From positions 68,944,001 through 69,008,000 of the forward strand of contig OZ241829.1 of assembly GCA_965202585.1 (NCBI GenBank): a stretch of 64,000 nt of DNA, in the 5' to 3' direction. Numbering within the stretch: position 1 is the stretch's first letter; each line of letters begins with the position of its first letter. The notes beneath the pieces were generated by a model, which saw only the letters and a program-made list of their open reading frames with translations, was not told the DNA's origin and made no database searches. A program made the translations under genes and the position numbers. Source of the DNA: Thalia democratica. Lineage: Eukaryota. Of the stretch, positions 1,312 to 40,261 are shown piece after piece.

Positions 1312-2394
1312 ATGAAAAAGAGCTGCATTGCAACGCTGGGAGCTTACCTGCTCAGCAAAAAGACGGACTGCAACTTATTTCCGCAAGGTGTCCTCGCTCG
1401 CTCAGATGTAAGCGCCGGAGACGGCAACTACCCTCCGCCCCTGGAACCGAATGATTTGAACATTAGGAAGCGCCCCTTCAATACGCGGCTCTACGGCGCA
1501 CCAACGGCGCAGGAGAACGAGCAAATAACGGCCTTGAAAAACAATCCTTTCACAGAAAACGACCGCCAGGATGAACATCTGCTCGAAAGCAACTGGGACG
1601 GGCTGGAAGGCTTCCAAGAAGAACACAACTATGCGAAGTGGATGAGACTGCATCTGCACTTTTACGCGGTGGGAGATGCCGAAAACGAAACTAGGAGATC
1701 AGATCAAACGAATGCCAGGCAGAGTTTTGTAAGGGCTCTTTCTGATGGCAGGTTGCAAAACTACCGCAACACTTTTGAGCGCAAATGGTTCCCGGTGAGC
1801 CGGTTGGACCCGCCGCATTCTGACGTCACAGTGCCGCGCAGCCACGACGCCATAGCGGACTTTTGGGAGATGGAGCACGCCTTCCGCAAAGTTTGCCATC
1901 GGTTCATTTTAAACGGAACATTTCAGTTTCGGAGCGCCCGTGAAGCAAACGGGAAGAAAGTGACAAAAGGTCCGGAGACAGTTGAACACTGGATTCACAT
2001 GCCCAAGAACCTGATCGCCTACTTCGTGCAGCGGGTGTTGCAGTTCCCCCCGGAAACCTTCGGCAGGTTCAGGATCAGCGACGGCTCCCACACGCACTTT
2101 TTCATCGACTACAACGGAACACCGAGATTTTATGTCGTTGGAGAGACGAGCTACCTGCATAAAGAGTACGAAAGAGTCCGTCGTGATTTCGATCGTGGAT
2201 CGGGCGATATTGGCTTAGACGTTCCCGCCGCTAAAGAAGAAGATCTTGGCGCGGGAGACTCTCCTCAAATCGGGTCTGACAAAAATTGTGAATATGAAGA
2301 AGGTGATTGGGAAGATGAAGACGCTGATGATGAAAGCTGTACGAATGATAGAGATGATGGTGAAACAAGAAATCGTCAGTTTTCTCTGTTTTAG
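1312..2394 (+). CDS. Uncharacterised intronless family, paralog B (360 aa from conserved MKKSC start)
   Basis: Long open frame at about 50-55% GC in about 22% GC flanks; paralogous to A and C; an upstream in-frame ATG at 1267 is not conserved in A or C. Confidence 0.85.
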   Translation: MKKSCIATLGAYLLSKKTDCNLFPQGVLARSDVSAGDGNYPPPLEPNDLNIRKRPFNTRLYGAPTAQENEQITALKNNPFTENDRQDEHLLESNWDGLEGFQEEHNYAKWMRLHLHFYAVGDAENETRRSDQTNARQSFVRALSDGRLQNYRNTFERKWFPVSRLDPPHSDVTVPRSHDAIADFWEMEHAFRKVCHRFILNGTFQFRSAREANGKKVTKGPETVEHWIHMPKNLIAYFVQRVLQFPPETFGRFRISDGSHTHFFIDYNGTPRFYVVGETSYLHKEYERVRRDFDRGSGDIGLDVPAAKEEDLGAGDSPQIGSDKNCEYEEGDWEDEDADDESCTNDRDDGETRNRQFSLF

Positions 2395-3178
2395 GAAGTC
2401 ACAACTTCTGATGTATTTGTGGTACTGTGCATTTTGTTAACAAAGTTTTCAGAACTGTTGTATGACTTTATTTGTTTTGTTGATGAAAGTTGTATTTTGT
2501 TCTAATTGAGAGCTTAAAAGAACTGTTAAATTTATATGTCTAACGTTGTTTGTTTTGCAAAACATTTGTGCGTTTTCTGTCGTACCGACAACAAACATAA
2601 TAAAAACTAGTAAAGTTAATGTAGCTTTAGATTTTTGCTTTAAATTTCTATGTTAATTTGTAATGAATAATTTAAATTTAAAAAGTTATGGACGTTTACA
2701 AACTGACACTAAATTTATCTATATTATATACCCAACACATATCACTTTAAATTTTGGTTTTCTAATTAGTAAGCACCAAAATATAGCTTTTAACTTACGA
2801 TAGTGTTCTATACTTACCATAGTTTAACCAAGAAACAGTTAGGAAAAATAATATGTATATAAAATAAGCTGTAACATAAAGTTGTTGTTAATTTGAAAAA
2901 TGTATAAGCTACATATCTGTGTTTAAGTTATTAAGCTTTACCATTAATTCAAAGCAACGCCAGTTTAAGTTAGATCACTAGTTCTCCATAACAGCTATGA
3001 TATTTATTATTTTTAAAAACCGTGAGTTGCTAAAATCTTTTATTAAAAAACTCGTTTTTTCTTAATTGCAATAAACCTTTAAGTGTATATTAACTCTTTA
3101 AAGTTTAAATAACTTATAATAAATTGATAAGATGACACTATAATAATCACCGTAGAACAAACAAACAAAATAAATAAA

Positions 3179-4264
3179 ATGATGAAAAAAAGCTGCTTTG
3201 CAACGCTGGGAGCTTACCTGCTCAGCAAAAAGATGGACTGCAACTTATTTCCGCAAGGTGTCCTCGCTCGCTCAGATGTAAGCGCCGGAGACGGCAACTA
3301 CCCTCCGCCCCTGGAACCGAACGATTTGAACATTAGGAAGCGCCCCTTCAATACAAGGCTCTACGGCGCGCCAACGGCGCAGGAGAACGAGCAAATAACG
3401 GCCTTGAACAACAACCCTTTCACAGAAAACGACCGCCAGGATGAACATCTGCTCGAAAGCAACTGGGACGGGCTGGAAGGCTTCCAAACCGAGCACGCCC
3501 ATGGAAGGTCGATGAAACTGCACCTGCACTTTTACGCAAAGGAAGATGCCGAAAACAACACTAGGAGGTTTGATCAAACGAATGCCAGGCAGAGAATAAT
3601 AAGGGGTCCCCTTAACACGCTGAAAAACTACGGCGACATCTTTGCGCGCTACAGGTTTCCGGTGAGCCGGTTGGACCCGCCGCATTCTGACGTCACAGTG
3701 CCGCGAGGCCACGACGTCATAGCGGAATTTTGGGAGATGGAGCACGCCTTCCGCAAAGTTTGCCATAGGTTCATCTTAAACGGACAATTTGAGTGGCGGA
3801 AAGTTCGTGAAGAAAATGGGAAGAAAAAAACAAAAGGTCCGGAGACAGTTGAACATTGGCATAACATGCCCAAGAACCTGATCGCCTATTTCGTGCAGCG
3901 GGTGTTGCAGTTCCCGCCGGAAACATTCGGCAGGTTCAGGATCAGCGACGGCTCCCACACGCACTTTTACATCGACTACAACGGAAGACCGAATTTTTCG
4001 GTCATTGGAGAGACGAGCCATCTGCATAAAGAGTACGAAAGAGGCCGTCGTGATTTCGATCGTGGATCGGGCGATATTGGTTTGGACGTTCCCGCCGCTA
4101 AAGAAGAAGATCTTTATGCAGGAGACTCTCCTCAAATCGGGTCTGAAAAAAATTGTGAATATGAAGAAGGTGATTGGGAAGATGAAGACGCTGATGATGA
4201 TGAAAACTGTACGAATGATAGAGACGTTGGTGAAACAAGAAATCGTCAGTTTTCTCTGTTTTAA
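3179..4264 (+). CDS. Uncharacterised intronless family, paralog C (361 aa)
   Basis: Intact ORF; first ~100 codons nearly identical to B; shares the DPPHSDVTVPR and FPPETFGRFRISDGSHTH blocks and the tail. Confidence 0.85.
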   Translation: MMKKSCFATLGAYLLSKKMDCNLFPQGVLARSDVSAGDGNYPPPLEPNDLNIRKRPFNTRLYGAPTAQENEQITALNNNPFTENDRQDEHLLESNWDGLEGFQTEHAHGRSMKLHLHFYAKEDAENNTRRFDQTNARQRIIRGPLNTLKNYGDIFARYRFPVSRLDPPHSDVTVPRGHDVIAEFWEMEHAFRKVCHRFILNGQFEWRKVREENGKKKTKGPETVEHWHNMPKNLIAYFVQRVLQFPPETFGRFRISDGSHTHFYIDYNGRPNFSVIGETSHLHKEYERGRRDFDRGSGDIGLDVPAAKEEDLYAGDSPQIGSEKNCEYEEGDWEDEDADDDENCTNDRDVGETRNRQFSLF

Positions 4265-38389: not shown

Positions 38390-39175
38390 GAAGTCACAAC
38401 TTCTGATGTATTTGTGGTACTGTGCATTTTGTTAACAAAGATTTCAGAACTGTTGTATGACTTTATTTGTTTTGTTGATGAAAGTTGTATTTTGTTCTAA
38501 TTAAGAGCTTAAAAGAACTGTTAAATTTATATGTCTAACGTTGTTTGTTTTGCAAAACATTTGTGCGTTTTCTGTCGTACCGACAACAAAACATAATAAA
38601 AACTAGTAAAGTTAATGTAGCTTTAGATTTTTGCTTTAAATTTCTATGTTAATTTGTAATGAATAAGTTAAATTTAAAAAGTTATGGACATATACAAACT
38701 GACACTAAATTTATCTATATTATATACCCAACACATATCACTTTAAATTTTGGTTTTCTAATTAGTAAGCACCAAAATATAGCTTTTAACTTACGATAGT
38801 GTTTAATACTTACCATAGTTTAACCAAGAAACAGTTAGGAAAAATAATATGTGTATAAAATAAGCTGTATCATAAAGTTGTTGTTATTTTGAAAAAGGTT
38901 TAAGCTACATATCTGTGTTTAAGTTATTAAGCTTTTCCATTAATTCAAAGCAACGCCAGTTTAAGTTAGATCACTAGTTCTCCATAACAGCTATGATATT
39001 TATTATTTTTAAAAACCGTGAGTTGCTAAAATCTTTTATTAAAAAACTCGTTTTTTCTTAAATGCAATAAACATTTAAGTGTATATTAACTCTTTAAAGT
39101 TTAAATAACTTATAAAAAAATTGATAAGATAACACTATAATTATCACCGTAGAACAAACAAACTAAATAAATAAA

Positions 39176-40261
39176 ATGATAAAAAAAAGCTGCTTTGCAA
39201 CGCTTGGAGCTTACCTGCTCAGCAAAAAGATGGACTGCAACTTATTTCCGCAAGGTGTCCTCGCTCGCTCAGATGTAAGCGCCGGAGACGGCAACTACCC
39301 TCCGCCCCTGGAACCGAACGATTTGAACATTAGGAAGCGCCCCTTCAATACGAGGCTCTACGGCGCGCCAACTGCGCAGGAGAACGAGCAAATAACGGCC
39401 TTGAACAACAACCCTTTCGCAGAAAACGACCGCCAGGATGAACATCTGCTCGAAAGCAACTGGGACGGACTGGAAGGCTTCCAAACCGAGCACGCCCATG
39501 GAAGGTCGATGAGACTGCACCTGCACTTTTACGCAAAAGAAGATGCCGAAAACAACACTAGGAGGTTTGATCAAACGAATGCCAGGCAGAGAATAATAAG
39601 GGGTCCCCTTAACACGCTGAAAAACTACGGCGACATCTTTGCGCGCTACAGGTTTCCGGTGAGCCGGTTGGACCCGCCGCATTCTGACGTCACAGTGCCG
39701 CGAGGCCACGACGTCATAGCGGAATTTTGGGAGATGGAGCACGCCTTCCGCAAAGTTTGCCATAGGTTCATCTTAAACGGACAATTTGAGTGGCGGAAAA
39801 TTCGTGAAGAAAATGGAAAGAAAAAAACAAAAGGTCCGGAGACAGTTGAACACTGGCATAACATGCCCAAGAACCTGATCGCCTACTTCGTGCAGCGTGT
39901 GTTGCAGTTCCCGCCGGAAACATTCGGCAGGTTCAGGATCAGCGACGGCTCCCACACGCACTTTTACATCGACTACAACGGAAGACCGAATTTTTCGGTC
40001 ATTGGTGAGACGAGCCACCTGCATAAAGAGTACGAAAGAGGCCGTCGTGATTTCGATCGTGGATCGGGCGATATTGGTTTGGACGTTCCCGCCGCTAATG
40101 AAGAAGATCTTGGCGCCGGAGACTCTCCTCAAATCGGGTCTGACAAAAATTGTGAATATGAAGAAGGTGATTGGGAAGATGAAGACGCTGATGATGATGA
40201 AAACTGTACGAATGATAGAGACGTTGGTGAAATAAGAAATCGTCAGTTTTCTCTGTTTTAA
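39176..40261 (+). CDS. Paralog C' (361 aa), third core
   Basis: Intact ORF; carries B-like patches in the tail region. Confidence 0.85.
   Translation: MIKKSCFATLGAYLLSKKMDCNLFPQGVLARSDVSAGDGNYPPPLEPNDLNIRKRPFNTRLYGAPTAQENEQITALNNNPFAENDRQDEHLLESNWDGLEGFQTEHAHGRSMRLHLHFYAKEDAENNTRRFDQTNARQRIIRGPLNTLKNYGDIFARYRFPVSRLDPPHSDVTVPRGHDVIAEFWEMEHAFRKVCHRFILNGQFEWRKIREENGKKKTKGPETVEHWHNMPKNLIAYFVQRVLQFPPETFGRFRISDGSHTHFYIDYNGRPNFSVIGETSHLHKEYERGRRDFDRGSGDIGLDVPAANEEDLGAGDSPQIGSDKNCEYEEGDWEDEDADDDENCTNDRDVGEIRNRQFSLF

What the first reader, a model, noticed from the sequence alone, without database searches (positions are those of the whole stretch)
1805..40140. Invariant DNA blocks alternate with hypervariable blocks, with reciprocal swaps between paralogs (segmental gene conversion)
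Seen: TGGACCCGCCGCATTCTGACGTCACAGTGCCGCG (34 nt, 1805-1838 in B), GATGGAGCACGCCTTCCGCAAA and GGCAGGTTCAGGATCAGCGACGG are identical in A, B and C including synonymous sites, while the segments between them barely align. B has EDLGAG and C has EDLYAG, but in the third core B' has EDLYAG and C' has EDLGAG. B' also gained C-type FQTEH, and A' has B/C-type GDSPQ and CTCGCTCGCTCAG. Inference: conserved anchors seed conversion or unequal exchange that shuffles variable cassettes, producing a combinatorial repertoire as in antigenic-variation or immune arrays.
Basis: partly seen in the sequence, partly recalled or inferred. Interest (0 to 1): 0.72.

Follow-up and report, generated by a model that had tools for sequence, protein, structure and literature searches.

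The report
Tandem array of dead PGAM5-like genes
The window holds the last three of seven 18-kb tandem repeats, each with three single-exon genes descended from the mitochondrial phosphatase PGAM5 that have lost their catalytic residues. The "invariant blocks" are the conserved PGAM5 motifs, and paralogs exchange only short patches, so this is ordinary tandem-family evolution and not an immune-style cassette shuffler.

Summary
All three anchors are exact in all 8 copies in the window, and the G/Y, FQTEH, GDSPQ and CTCGCTCGCTCAG differences are there.

- **Context.** The window is the right end of a 7-unit, ~18-kb tandem array (21 intact A/B/C genes). Four older paralogs (D-G) lie upstream and one (H) is on another chromosome.
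- **Family.** The proteins are a divergent, apparently catalytically dead offshoot of PGAM5.
- **Anchors.** They are PGAM5 motifs. Their silent-site identity is no higher than at other conserved codons (0.80 vs 0.79) and is only marginally clustered (P 0.03-0.12).
- **"Hypervariable" blocks.** They differ between classes but are fixed within each class across all seven units, with dN/dS around 0.4-1.5. No cassette is ever swapped, so there is no combinatorial repertoire.
- **Exchange that is real.** Gene A is a D-type 5' end joined to an E-type body. The units are crossover mosaics. PHI gives P=0.0005.
- **The "swap".** The only multi-site (≥3 adjacent markers) B/C patch is a 13-60 bp tract at the G/Y codon. 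It is not reciprocal: B7's tract is D-type, and C7 shares its tract with C2/C3.

Earlier notes of this scan report similar mosaics in other tandem clusters of this genome.

The parts
1..300 (+). 3' end of gene A of unit 5 (A5; the gene starts 861 bp before the window)
1267..2394 (+). Gene B5. The ORF is 375 aa; the family-type start MKKSC is at 1312, giving 361 aa. PGAM5-like, catalytic motifs lost.
3179..4264 (+). Gene C5 (361 aa)
1805..1838 (+). Anchor 1 (codes L-DPPHSDVTVPR), at the position of PGAM5's proline-rich beta3-alpha3 loop. Also at 3672, 17708, 19826, 21693, 35719, 37797 and 39669.
1869..1890 (+). Anchor 2 (codes MEHAFRK), which aligns with PGAM5 IEAAFR. Also at 3736, 17772, 19890, 21757, 35783, 37861 and 39733.
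2062..2084 (+). Anchor 3 (codes GRFRISDG), inside the block PKNLIAYFVQR..QFPPETFGRFRISDGSHTH, which aligns with PGAM5 [33 protein letters not shown]. Also at 3929, 17926, 20083, 21950, 35937, 38054 and 39926.
15236..33255 (+). Repeat unit 6 of the array (about 18.0 kb). It differs from unit 5 by 2 substitutions.
15237..15353 (+). Truncated 3' end (38 codons plus stop) of paralog E. It marks the left junction of the duplicated unit.
15578..15943 (-). Relic ORF with a CENP-B_N (pogo/Tigger-type) DNA-binding domain inside the unit
17161..18321 (+). Gene A6 (386 aa)
17139..17299 (+). D-type 5' tract of gene A (-22 to about +140). It is 95-98% identical to D and 80% to E; downstream the gene is 86-93% E-like and 47% D-like.
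19288..20415 (+). Gene B6, identical to B5
21200..22285 (+). Gene C6, identical to C5
33256..43053 (+). Repeat unit 7, the truncated last unit. Homology to unit 6 ends at 43053.
33257..33367 (+). Truncated E 3' end at the start of unit 7
35172..36326 (+). Gene A7 (384 aa). It lacks the 6-nt RQ insertion, as does A4.
37262..38389 (+). Gene B7 (375-aa ORF; MKKSC start at 37304)
38240..38252 (+). Short D-type conversion tract in B7 (TAT GCA ... GAT CCT). Minimum length 13 bp, maximum about 60 bp. Not seen in the independent read sets laid on it.
38390..39126 (+). 3' UTR of B. A metatranscriptome contig runs from 38614 to 39126 and then into non-templated poly(A).
39176..40261 (+). Gene C7 (361 aa)
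40112..40144 (+). B-type patch in C7 (GGC ... GAC), shared with C2/C3. Bounded by C-type sites on both sides; maximum about 190 bp.

Best explanation
**What it is.** An ~18-kb segment carries three single-exon paralogs (A, B, C). It was amplified to seven head-to-tail copies by unequal crossing-over inside an older cluster of the same family (G, F, D, E upstream).

**The genes.** They encode a lineage-specific, apparently catalytically dead branch of the PGAM5 histidine-phosphatase family.
- Lost: the RH(G/S) nucleophile loop is deleted, the second catalytic His is replaced, and the R152 region is lost in A-E.
- Kept: the NWD part of the WDxNWD oligomerisation motif, the proline-rich loop and the C-terminal half of the fold.
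- Gained: an acidic C-terminal tail.

**Why conserved and divergent blocks alternate.** This is uneven protein constraint. The anchors are the retained PGAM5 motifs. The divergent blocks are the former active-site half, now nearly unconstrained and full of indels.

**Exchange on top of this.** It is ordinary tandem-family exchange:
- One old chimeric event built gene A from a D-type first ~45 codons and an E-type body.
- Later unequal crossovers made the units mosaics of each other.
- A few short non-reciprocal conversion tracts lie in the highly similar 5' and 3' gene ends.

**Shown:** array structure, homology, loss of catalytic motifs, segment incongruence, tracts, and transcription of B.

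**Inferred:** lack of phosphatase activity, retained oligomerisation, and crossover as the amplification mechanism.
For: **Array**
- 7 units spaced 17,983-18,152 bp, with 21 intact ORFs.
- Every unit from 2 to 7 starts with a truncated copy of E's last ~38 codons, 95-96% identical to E.
- Units 5 and 6 differ by 0.1 per 1000. Unit 2 equals unit 3 in the gene half and is within about 0-3.5% of unit 1 (mostly under 1%) in the distal half. Unit 4 equals unit 5 from B through C.

**Family**
- The family profile hits PGAM5 structures 3MXO/5MUF/6CNI at E about 1.5e-14.
- hhalign against PGAM5-like proteins gives probability 99.8%, E 3.5e-29.
- The AF2 core model has pLDDT 81, and its best Foldseek hits are the PGAM5 dodecamers at TM 0.59-0.67.
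- The joint alignment shows a 5-residue gap at IRHGQ and P-K-N in place of C-H-A-N. The catalytic residues R104, H105, R152, E177 and H230 are taken from PMC5501728.

**Anchors not special at silent sites**
- Codon identity at amino-acid-identical codons between A and B is 0.80 in motifs and 0.79 elsewhere.
- The longest silent-identical run gives P=0.20. Over all 21 copies P is 0.12, 0.05 and 0.03.
- The anchors accumulate 3-6 differences, silent and replacement together, in distant members.
- The non-coding upstream regions of A and B are 72% identical, similar to pS of 0.20-0.36 in the conserved segments.

**No shuffling:** the painting at 95 diagnostic sites shows none.

**Near-neutral variable blocks:** omega is about 0.4-1.5 in 40-codon windows of close pairs.

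**Exchange:**

**Expression:** Tara metatranscriptome contigs with UTRs, and a poly(A) end at 39126.
Against: - Silent differences at conserved codons are higher in the N-terminal variable segment (0.40) than elsewhere (0.14-0.17; chi-square p=0.014). This could mean some homogenisation of the conserved parts, or misaligned chance matches in the variable part. I could not separate the two.
- Silent-invariant runs are marginally clustered (P=0.03 for the top three runs).
- The B7 D-type tract was not covered or seen in any independent read set, so it rests on this assembly alone.
- Loss of activity is inferred from sequence only.
- The AF2 model used an alignment that includes true PGAM5s, so the fold match is not fully independent of the sequence match.
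Confidence: 0.8

Rival explanations
1. The conserved anchors act as homology seeds for gene conversion or unequal exchange. This shuffles the variable blocks between paralogs and generates a combinatorial, immune- or antigenic-variation-like repertoire.
For: - Recombination signal is present (PHI P=0.0005).
- Topology changes along the gene.
- A recurrently exchanged spot exists at the G/Y codon.
- A Tara transcript contig is B-type up to alignment column 1027 and C2/C3-type from column 1076.
Against: - Across 14 B/C copies and 95 diagnostic sites, no variable block is exchanged.
- A1-7, B1-7 and C1-7 each keep one cassette set.
- The breakpoints found (about codon 47 of A, column 1027-1079, and the 13-60 bp tract) are not at the anchors.
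- Omega in the variable blocks is about 0.4-1.5, not clearly above 1.
- All copies are complete genes with their own flanks and UTRs. There is no silent-donor plus expression-site layout.
- The Tara chimera switches inside a 193-nt stretch that is identical in B2/3 and C2/3, so it may be an assembler artefact.
Confidence: 0.04
2. The paralogs are old, and the conserved segments (5' end, core motifs, 3' tail) are kept similar at silent sites by frequent short-tract gene conversion (concerted evolution). The variable parts escape because they are too diverged to pair.
For: - Silent differences are 0.40 in the variable N-terminal segment against 0.14-0.17 elsewhere for A-B (p=0.014).
- NG86 dS is 1.4 against 0.2-0.5.
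- In the C-terminal segment E is as close to B/C/D (87-89%) as to A (87%), while in the core it is 73% against 93%.
- The micro-tracts found lie in these similar ends.
- Family GC3 is 0.57-0.82 against 0.28 in a neighbouring ORF, as GC-biased conversion would give.
Against: - Motif and non-motif conserved codons show the same silent identity.
- The non-coding upstream of A and B is still alignable at 72%, so the duplicates are not ancient.
- A is not closer to B/C than the out-of-array paralog E is, within the core (0.17 vs 0.23, not significant).
- The highest GC3 is in F and G, which lie outside the array and in the opposite orientation.
- Alignment error inflates dS in the variable segment.
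Confidence: 0.12
3. The 'swaps', and perhaps some units, are assembly or polishing artefacts of a near-identical 18-kb repeat.
For: - Units 5 and 6 differ by only 2 substitutions in 18 kb.
- The B7 TAT/GAT-CCT tract was not found in the contigs of four public runs. The two organism runs had no contig across the site, and the metagenome contig shows the usual GGC GCG.
Against: - The C-type gene carrying GGC GCG (the C2/C3 form) is present in contigs of two organism runs and one 2016 metatranscriptome.
- The variants fall into coherent haplotypes shared by several units (C2=C3, C4=C5=C6, B4=B5=B6) and by paralog D.
- Units differ by 2-6% in non-coding DNA, enough for long reads to separate most of them.
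Confidence: 0.04

Closest known systems
PGAM5 (mitochondrial Ser/Thr/His phosphatase, histidine phosphatase superfamily branch 1; structures 3MXO, 5MUF, 6CNL)
   Same: - Clear profile and fold homology.
- An N-terminal hydrophobic segment.
- An NWD motif at the place of WDxNWD.
- A proline-rich loop (PxxPDPP here as FPVxRxDPP).
- IEAAFR matches MEHAFR.
- The [14 protein letters not shown]...GSITH block matches NLIAY-VQR--QFPPE...GSHTH.
- The model's best structural matches are the dodecameric form of PGAM5.
   Different: - The RH(G/S) loop with the nucleophile His105 is deleted.
- His230 is replaced (P-K-N for C-H-A-N).
- The R152 helix region is missing in A-E.
- E177 is not kept.
- A family-specific HSDVTVPR motif and a 60-90-residue acidic tail ending F-S/K-L-F are added.
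- No Pfam model detects the proteins directly.
- There are 27 complete-ORF copies in one genome.
Tandem multigene families under concerted evolution by unequal crossing-over and short-tract gene conversion (textbook cases from my own knowledge: globin, histone, U2 snRNA and opsin arrays)
   Same: - Head-to-tail units.
- Shifting blocks of identity between neighbouring units.
- A truncated gene at the unit junction.
- A chimeric gene.
- Short non-reciprocal tracts confined to highly similar stretches.
- A significant PHI test.
   Different: Nothing essential. The unit is large (18 kb, three genes), and the paralog classes inside a unit stay distinct.
Programmed gene-conversion diversification systems (trypanosome VSG, Borrelia vlsE, Neisseria pilE/pilS, chicken Ig pseudo-V genes; from my own knowledge)
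   Same: Conserved stretches alternate with divergent ones in tandem paralogs. Some conversion occurs.
   Different: - There is no expression site with silent partial cassettes.
- There are no mosaic combinations of variable blocks.
- The tracts lie outside the variable blocks.
- The variable blocks are near-neutral and fixed within each class.

Membership tests
Histidine phosphatase superfamily, PGAM5 subfamily | Significant sequence or profile homology to PGAM5 / His_Phos_1 proteins | tested here: met
   The family profile hits PDB PGAM5 at E 1.5e-14. hhalign gives probability 99.8%, E 3.5e-29. The distant hits carry PF00300. Single sequences give no Pfam hit.
Histidine phosphatase superfamily, PGAM5 subfamily | PGAM-type alpha/beta fold | tested here: met
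   The AF2 core model has pLDDT 81 and pTM 0.81. The Foldseek top 20 are all PGAM5, TM up to 0.67, E down to 7.5e-9. The model's alignment included true PGAM5s.
Histidine phosphatase superfamily, PGAM5 subfamily | RH(G/S) motif with the nucleophilic histidine (R104/H105 in human PGAM5) | tested here: not met
   All 16 family members show a 5-residue gap opposite IRHGQ in the joint alignment and in hhalign. An alternative register would keep a His but replace the Arg by Leu.
Histidine phosphatase superfamily, PGAM5 subfamily | Second catalytic histidine (H230, CH[AG]N), with R152 and E177 | tested here: not met
   P-K-N aligns with C-H-A-N. The segment holding R152 (S-M-x-R-A-x-E-T) is absent in A-E. 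The E177 position is G, W, R or D. Residue roles are from PMC5501728.
Histidine phosphatase superfamily, PGAM5 subfamily | WDxNWD oligomerisation motif N-terminal to the domain | tested here: inconclusive
   Only the second half is kept (SNWDG, KDWDG, ENWDA). It aligns in register with WDxNWD. Oligomerisation was not tested.
Programmed gene-conversion diversification array (antigenic-variation or immune type) | Variable cassettes recombined in different combinations among copies | tested here: not met
   Painting 14 B/C copies at 95 diagnostic sites shows only one patch of 4-5 adjacent sites and a few isolated or paired sites. A, B and C each keep one cassette set in all 7 units.
Programmed gene-conversion diversification array (antigenic-variation or immune type) | One expressed locus plus silent or partial donor copies | tested here: not met
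   All 21 array genes are intact full-length ORFs. Transcript contigs exist for B-, A-, G- and H-type members.
Programmed gene-conversion diversification array (antigenic-variation or immune type) | Diversifying selection (dN/dS > 1) on the variable blocks | tested here: inconclusive
   Omega is 0.4-1.5 in 40-codon windows of close pairs, with one window at 2.6 based on 2 synonymous changes. The counts are too small for a test.
Programmed gene-conversion diversification array (antigenic-variation or immune type) | Somatic or clonal generation of new mosaics | not testable with these tools
   This needs germline-versus-somatic long reads or amplicons.
Tandem gene array evolving by unequal crossing-over and gene conversion | Head-to-tail units with block-wise shifting identity, and a junction fragment | tested here: met
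Tandem gene array evolving by unequal crossing-over and gene conversion | Statistical recombination signal and segment-wise tree incongruence | tested here: met
   PHI gives P=0.0005 for B+C and for A-E. Segment trees differ, and the AU test gives p=0.031 for the 5' segment but p=0.085 (not significant) for the 3' segment.

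The most novel reading that the evidence does not exclude
The array is part of a lineage-specific radiation of PGAM5-derived pseudo-enzymes. These would keep the ring- or filament-forming parts of PGAM5 but have turned the former active-site half into a fast-evolving, class-specific surface. In effect this would be a diversified set of mitochondrial or stress- and death-signalling adaptors, or decoys that co-assemble with the active PGAM5 paralogs also present in this genome. 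Gene dosage would be raised by recent amplification.
Probability: 0.15. Interest if true: 0.55.

Novelty: new member of a known kind. Interest (0 to 1): 0.3.

Why it matters
- **For the scan.** Alternating identical and divergent DNA blocks in tandem paralogs need not mean cassette shuffling. Here the pattern reflects uneven protein constraint plus low overall silent divergence. Viewing all seven units turns the apparent "swaps" into two unrelated short tracts.
- **For biology.** The modest interest lies in the gene family. It is an unannotated, Pfam-invisible, expressed group of PGAM5 descendants without catalytic residues. There are 27 complete-ORF copies, 26 of them in this cluster, in a genome that an earlier scan note calls a pelagic tunicate. 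Several further single-exon PGAM5-like clusters sit beside it, some of which have also lost the motifs.
- **As a system.** This is a natural case for asking what a PGAM5 scaffold does without phosphatase activity.

Tried and rejected
- **Pfam on single proteins:** no hit at E<=1.
- **First AF2 model:** the full-length protein with a 16-sequence alignment gave pLDDT 47 and was unusable. It was replaced by a core model with 52 sequences.
- **'Templated variant' test:** I tested whether within-class variants match other paralogs more often than random mutation would (P 1e-4 to 1e-7). I rejected it as evidence because retained ancestral alleles give the same excess.
- **NG86 dS in the variable N-terminal segment (1.2-1.7):** not trusted, because the alignment there is about 30% identical and full of indels.
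- **Nucleotide-level function of the anchors** (for example the TGACGTCA palindrome as a CRE site, or the long antisense ORFs of 148-164 aa): rejected. The anchors change at silent sites in distant members, and antisense ORFs are expected in GC-rich coding DNA.
- **Read laying:** only short Logan contigs were available. They could not bridge units, give copy number or cover the B7 tract.
- **Tandem Repeats Finder:** finds nothing, because the 18-kb period is beyond its range.
- **Earlier findings near this place:** none.
- **Literature:** no paper links PGAM5 to tunicate paralog expansions in the searched library.

Full report
**1. What is at the coordinates**

The window lies in an AT-rich eukaryotic genome of 802 Mb, at C5:68,944,001-69,008,000.

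The ORF lists show long single-exon ORFs of 361-386 aa in the order A, B, C, repeated every ~18 kb. A whole-genome search plus retrieval of the neighbourhood gave the following picture:
- The window holds only the right end of an array of seven units, with B genes spaced 17,983-18,152 bp apart.
- The array has 21 intact A/B/C genes.
- It is preceded by four older paralogs: G and F on the minus strand, D and E on the plus strand.
- One further paralog (H) lies on contig C1.

I label the units 1-7. The window contains the tail of A5, then B5, C5, A6, B6, C6, A7, B7 and C7.

**2. What the genes are**

Single proteins hit no Pfam family. Among 5.8 billion proteins they have only 13 close relatives, all unnamed and all from Tara Oceans marine metagenomes and metatranscriptomes.

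The evidence for PGAM5 ancestry is:
- A profile of the family finds 258 more distant proteins. Those tested carry PF00300, histidine phosphatase branch 1.
- The same profile hits the solved structures of human PGAM5 (3MXO, 5MUF, 6CNI) at E about 1.5e-14.
- Profile-profile comparison with PGAM5-like proteins gives probability 99.8%, E 3.5e-29.
- An AlphaFold model of the core, built from a 52-sequence alignment, has pLDDT 81. Its best structural matches are the PGAM5 dodecamers, TM 0.59-0.67.

The joint alignment shows which parts are kept and which are lost.

| Kept | Lost |
|---|---|
| N-terminal hydrophobic segment | IRHGQ loop with the nucleophilic His (5-residue gap in every member) |
| NWD half of the WDxNWD oligomerisation motif | Second catalytic His (C-H-A-N becomes P-K-N) |
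| Proline-rich loop | Helix with R152 (absent in A-E) |
| IEAAFR-like motif | E177 |
| Long block equivalent to [33 protein letters not shown] | |

The roles of R104, H105, R152, E177, H230 and of WDxNWD are taken from PMC5501728. A family-specific acidic tail is added at the C-terminus. I infer that these proteins are pseudo-phosphatases that may still oligomerise. Neither point was tested.

The genome also has many other single-exon PGAM5-like genes in clusters. Some have RHG and CH[AG]N intact, and some are degenerate.

The genes are expressed:
- The Tara contigs are transcript-like, with AT-rich UTRs.
- One RNA contig runs through the B-C spacer and ends in a non-templated poly(A) at window 39126.

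**3. Are the anchors more conserved than expected?**

The anchors coincide with the retained PGAM5 motifs:
- Anchor 1 is the proline-rich loop (DPPHSDVTVPR).
- Anchor 2 is MEHAFRK.
- Anchor 3 is GRFRISDG.

At amino-acid-identical, degenerate codons, A and B use the same codon in 80% of universally conserved positions and in 79% of the other identical positions. The value expected at saturation is about 0.40. The paralogs are therefore simply not very old at silent sites, and runs of 7-11 unchanged codons are expected.

Three further results point the same way:
- The longest silent-identical run between A and B is not significant (P=0.20). Over all 21 copies the top one, two and three runs give P=0.12, 0.05 and 0.03.
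- The non-coding 830 bp upstream of A and of B still align at 72% identity. This is comparable with pS of 0.20-0.36 in the conserved segments.
- In more distant members (G and the Tara relatives) the anchors carry 3-6 differences each, silent and replacement together. There is no nucleotide-level constraint.

The one heterogeneity is a higher silent difference in the variable N-terminal segment (0.40 against 0.14-0.17, p=0.014). That can come from chance matches in a poorly alignable region or from mild homogenisation elsewhere. I could not separate these.

**4. Are the variable blocks hypervariable or shuffled?**

They differ between classes. A against B/C is about 47% identical in nucleotides in the N-terminal variable part, whereas B against C is 84-85% identical overall. 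Within a class they are almost invariant across the seven units.

Painting all 14 B and C copies at the 95 sites where the B and C majorities differ shows pure B and pure C patterns. The exceptions are a few single sites, two two-marker runs at the 5' end of C2/C3, and one patch of 4-5 adjacent sites.

For reliably aligned pairs (B-C, A-E, C-D, B-D), dN/dS in the variable windows is about 0.4-1.5 and in the motif windows 0.15-0.5. This fits relaxed constraint on the former active-site half, with no clear diversifying selection. The 21 genes give three cassette sets, which is not a combinatorial repertoire.

**5. What exchange is real**

(a) *Gene A is a chimera.*
- Its first ~140 nt, plus 22 nt upstream, are 95-98% identical to D, 93-94% to B/C and 80% to E.
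- From about column 141 onward it is 86-93% identical to E and 47-75% to D.
- Segment trees put A with B/C/D in segment 1 (82% bootstrap) and with E in segments 2 and 3 (100%). The AU test rejects A+E for segment 1 at p=0.031. For the 3' segment it does not (p=0.085).
- All seven A copies share this structure, so it predates the amplification.

(b) *The 18-kb units are mosaics of each other.*
- Units 5 and 6 differ by 2 substitutions.
- Unit 2 is identical to unit 3 through the gene half. In the distal half it is within about 0-3.5% of unit 1 (mostly under 1%).
- Unit 4 is identical to unit 5 from B through C but is 1.5-8.6% diverged before that.
- Each of units 2-7 begins with a truncated copy of E's last ~38 codons.
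- This is the signature of unequal crossing-over.

(c) *Short tracts.*
- Codon 370 is GGC (Gly) or TAT (Tyr), a three-base difference that cannot recur by chance.
- TAT-GCA is found in D, C1, C4-6 and B7. GGC is found in A, E, F, G, B1-6, C2, C3 and C7.
- B7's tract continues with two bases (GAT CCT) otherwise private to D. It is flanked by B-type sites, so its length is 13-60 bp. The donor was therefore D-like, not C.
- C7's GGC...GAC is shared with C2/C3, and the segment-2 tree groups C2 with C7 at 91%. Their unit partners B2/B3 are unchanged.
- The "reciprocal swap" seen in the window is therefore two separate non-reciprocal events at one spot.
- FQTEH in B7 and CTCGCTCGCTCAG in A7 are the common states of their classes. 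B4-6 and A5/6 are the deviants.
- GDSPQ without the RQ insertion is shared by A4 and A7. It conflicts with other sites that join A4 to A5/6, again pointing to inter-unit recombination.

PHI tests are significant for B+C and for A-E (both P=0.0005).

All the tracts lie in the gene ends, where the paralogs are most alike, so their effect is to homogenise.

**6. Independent data**

Contigs of two organism runs and one 2016 metatranscriptome carry a C-type gene with GGC GCG, the C2/C3 form. That mosaic is therefore not an assembly error.

The B7 tract is not covered by contigs in the two organism runs, and the metagenome contig shows the usual B form. It rests on this assembly alone.

A Tara transcript contig (P0001) is B2/3-type up to column 1027 and C2/C3-type from column 1076 to the end. 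The C-type part includes a base seen in the assembly only in C2/C3. The switch lies at a 193-nt stretch that is identical in both genes. It could be either a real recombinant or an assembler chimera.

**7. Verdict**

Gene conversion and unequal exchange do occur. The proposed anchor-seeded cassette shuffling and combinatorial repertoire are not supported.

The feature is an ordinary tandem gene array under unequal crossing-over with occasional micro-conversion. What is new is the gene family it carries. Earlier notes of this scan describe similar mosaic patterns in other tandem clusters of this genome. I did not test those.

Noticed in passing
window 1267-40261 (all family CDS) versus flanks and window 58424-59167: The family's coding GC is about 0.50-0.61 and its GC3 is 0.57-0.82 (0.97 in the core of paralog G). 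This sits in DNA of GC 0.22-0.28. A neighbouring ORF has GC3 0.28, and the acidic tail of the same genes has GC3 of only 0.24-0.35. The cause is unknown: GC-biased conversion, selection on intronless mRNAs, or a GC-rich origin.
   Followed up: partly
G000 C5:68851270-68851980 (+) and window 58424-59167 (-): Two closely similar ORFs of 236 and 247 aa (both begin MDKVWKD.HMFQCGPLDQS) flank the whole PGAM5-like cluster in inverted orientation. The window copy has no Pfam hit.
   Followed up: no
window 15578-15943 (-), and the same place in every unit: A 121-aa ORF with a CENP-B_N (pogo/Tigger-type transposase) DNA-binding domain, E 2e-8. It is a transposon relic between the truncated E fragment and gene A.
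   Followed up: partly
G000 C2:44514366, C9:18948888, C5:20286764-20291534, C5:38117889-38127813, C5:47091371-47092985, C8:65048814-65050596: Many further single-exon PGAM5-like genes, several in tandem clusters. Some keep WDxNWD, RHG and CH[AG]N. Others have lost them (for example IRDAQH, or VKTAQH with CDKN). Loss of catalytic residues therefore seems to have happened more than once.
   Followed up: partly
L053 and L054 (Tara metatranscriptome contigs, protein P0001): The transcript contig is B2/3-type for the first ~1030 nt of the CDS and C2/C3-type for the last ~250 nt. It is either a real B/C recombinant in the wild population or an assembler chimera across a 193-nt identical stretch.
   Followed up: partly
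window 24950-33255 versus 43053 onward: The last unit is truncated. About 8.3 kb of the internal units has no counterpart after C7 within the window. The array end is therefore not a simple full final copy followed by the original flank.
   Followed up: no
window 1267-1311, 19288-19332, 37262-37303: B genes of units 4-7 have an in-frame upstream ATG that adds 14 residues (375 aa against 361 aa). B1-3 lack it. Which start is used is unknown.
   Followed up: no
G000 C1:40617634-40618383, upstream of paralog H: Fragments of a further family member that carry stop codons, probably a pseudogene, next to the intact H gene.
   Followed up: no
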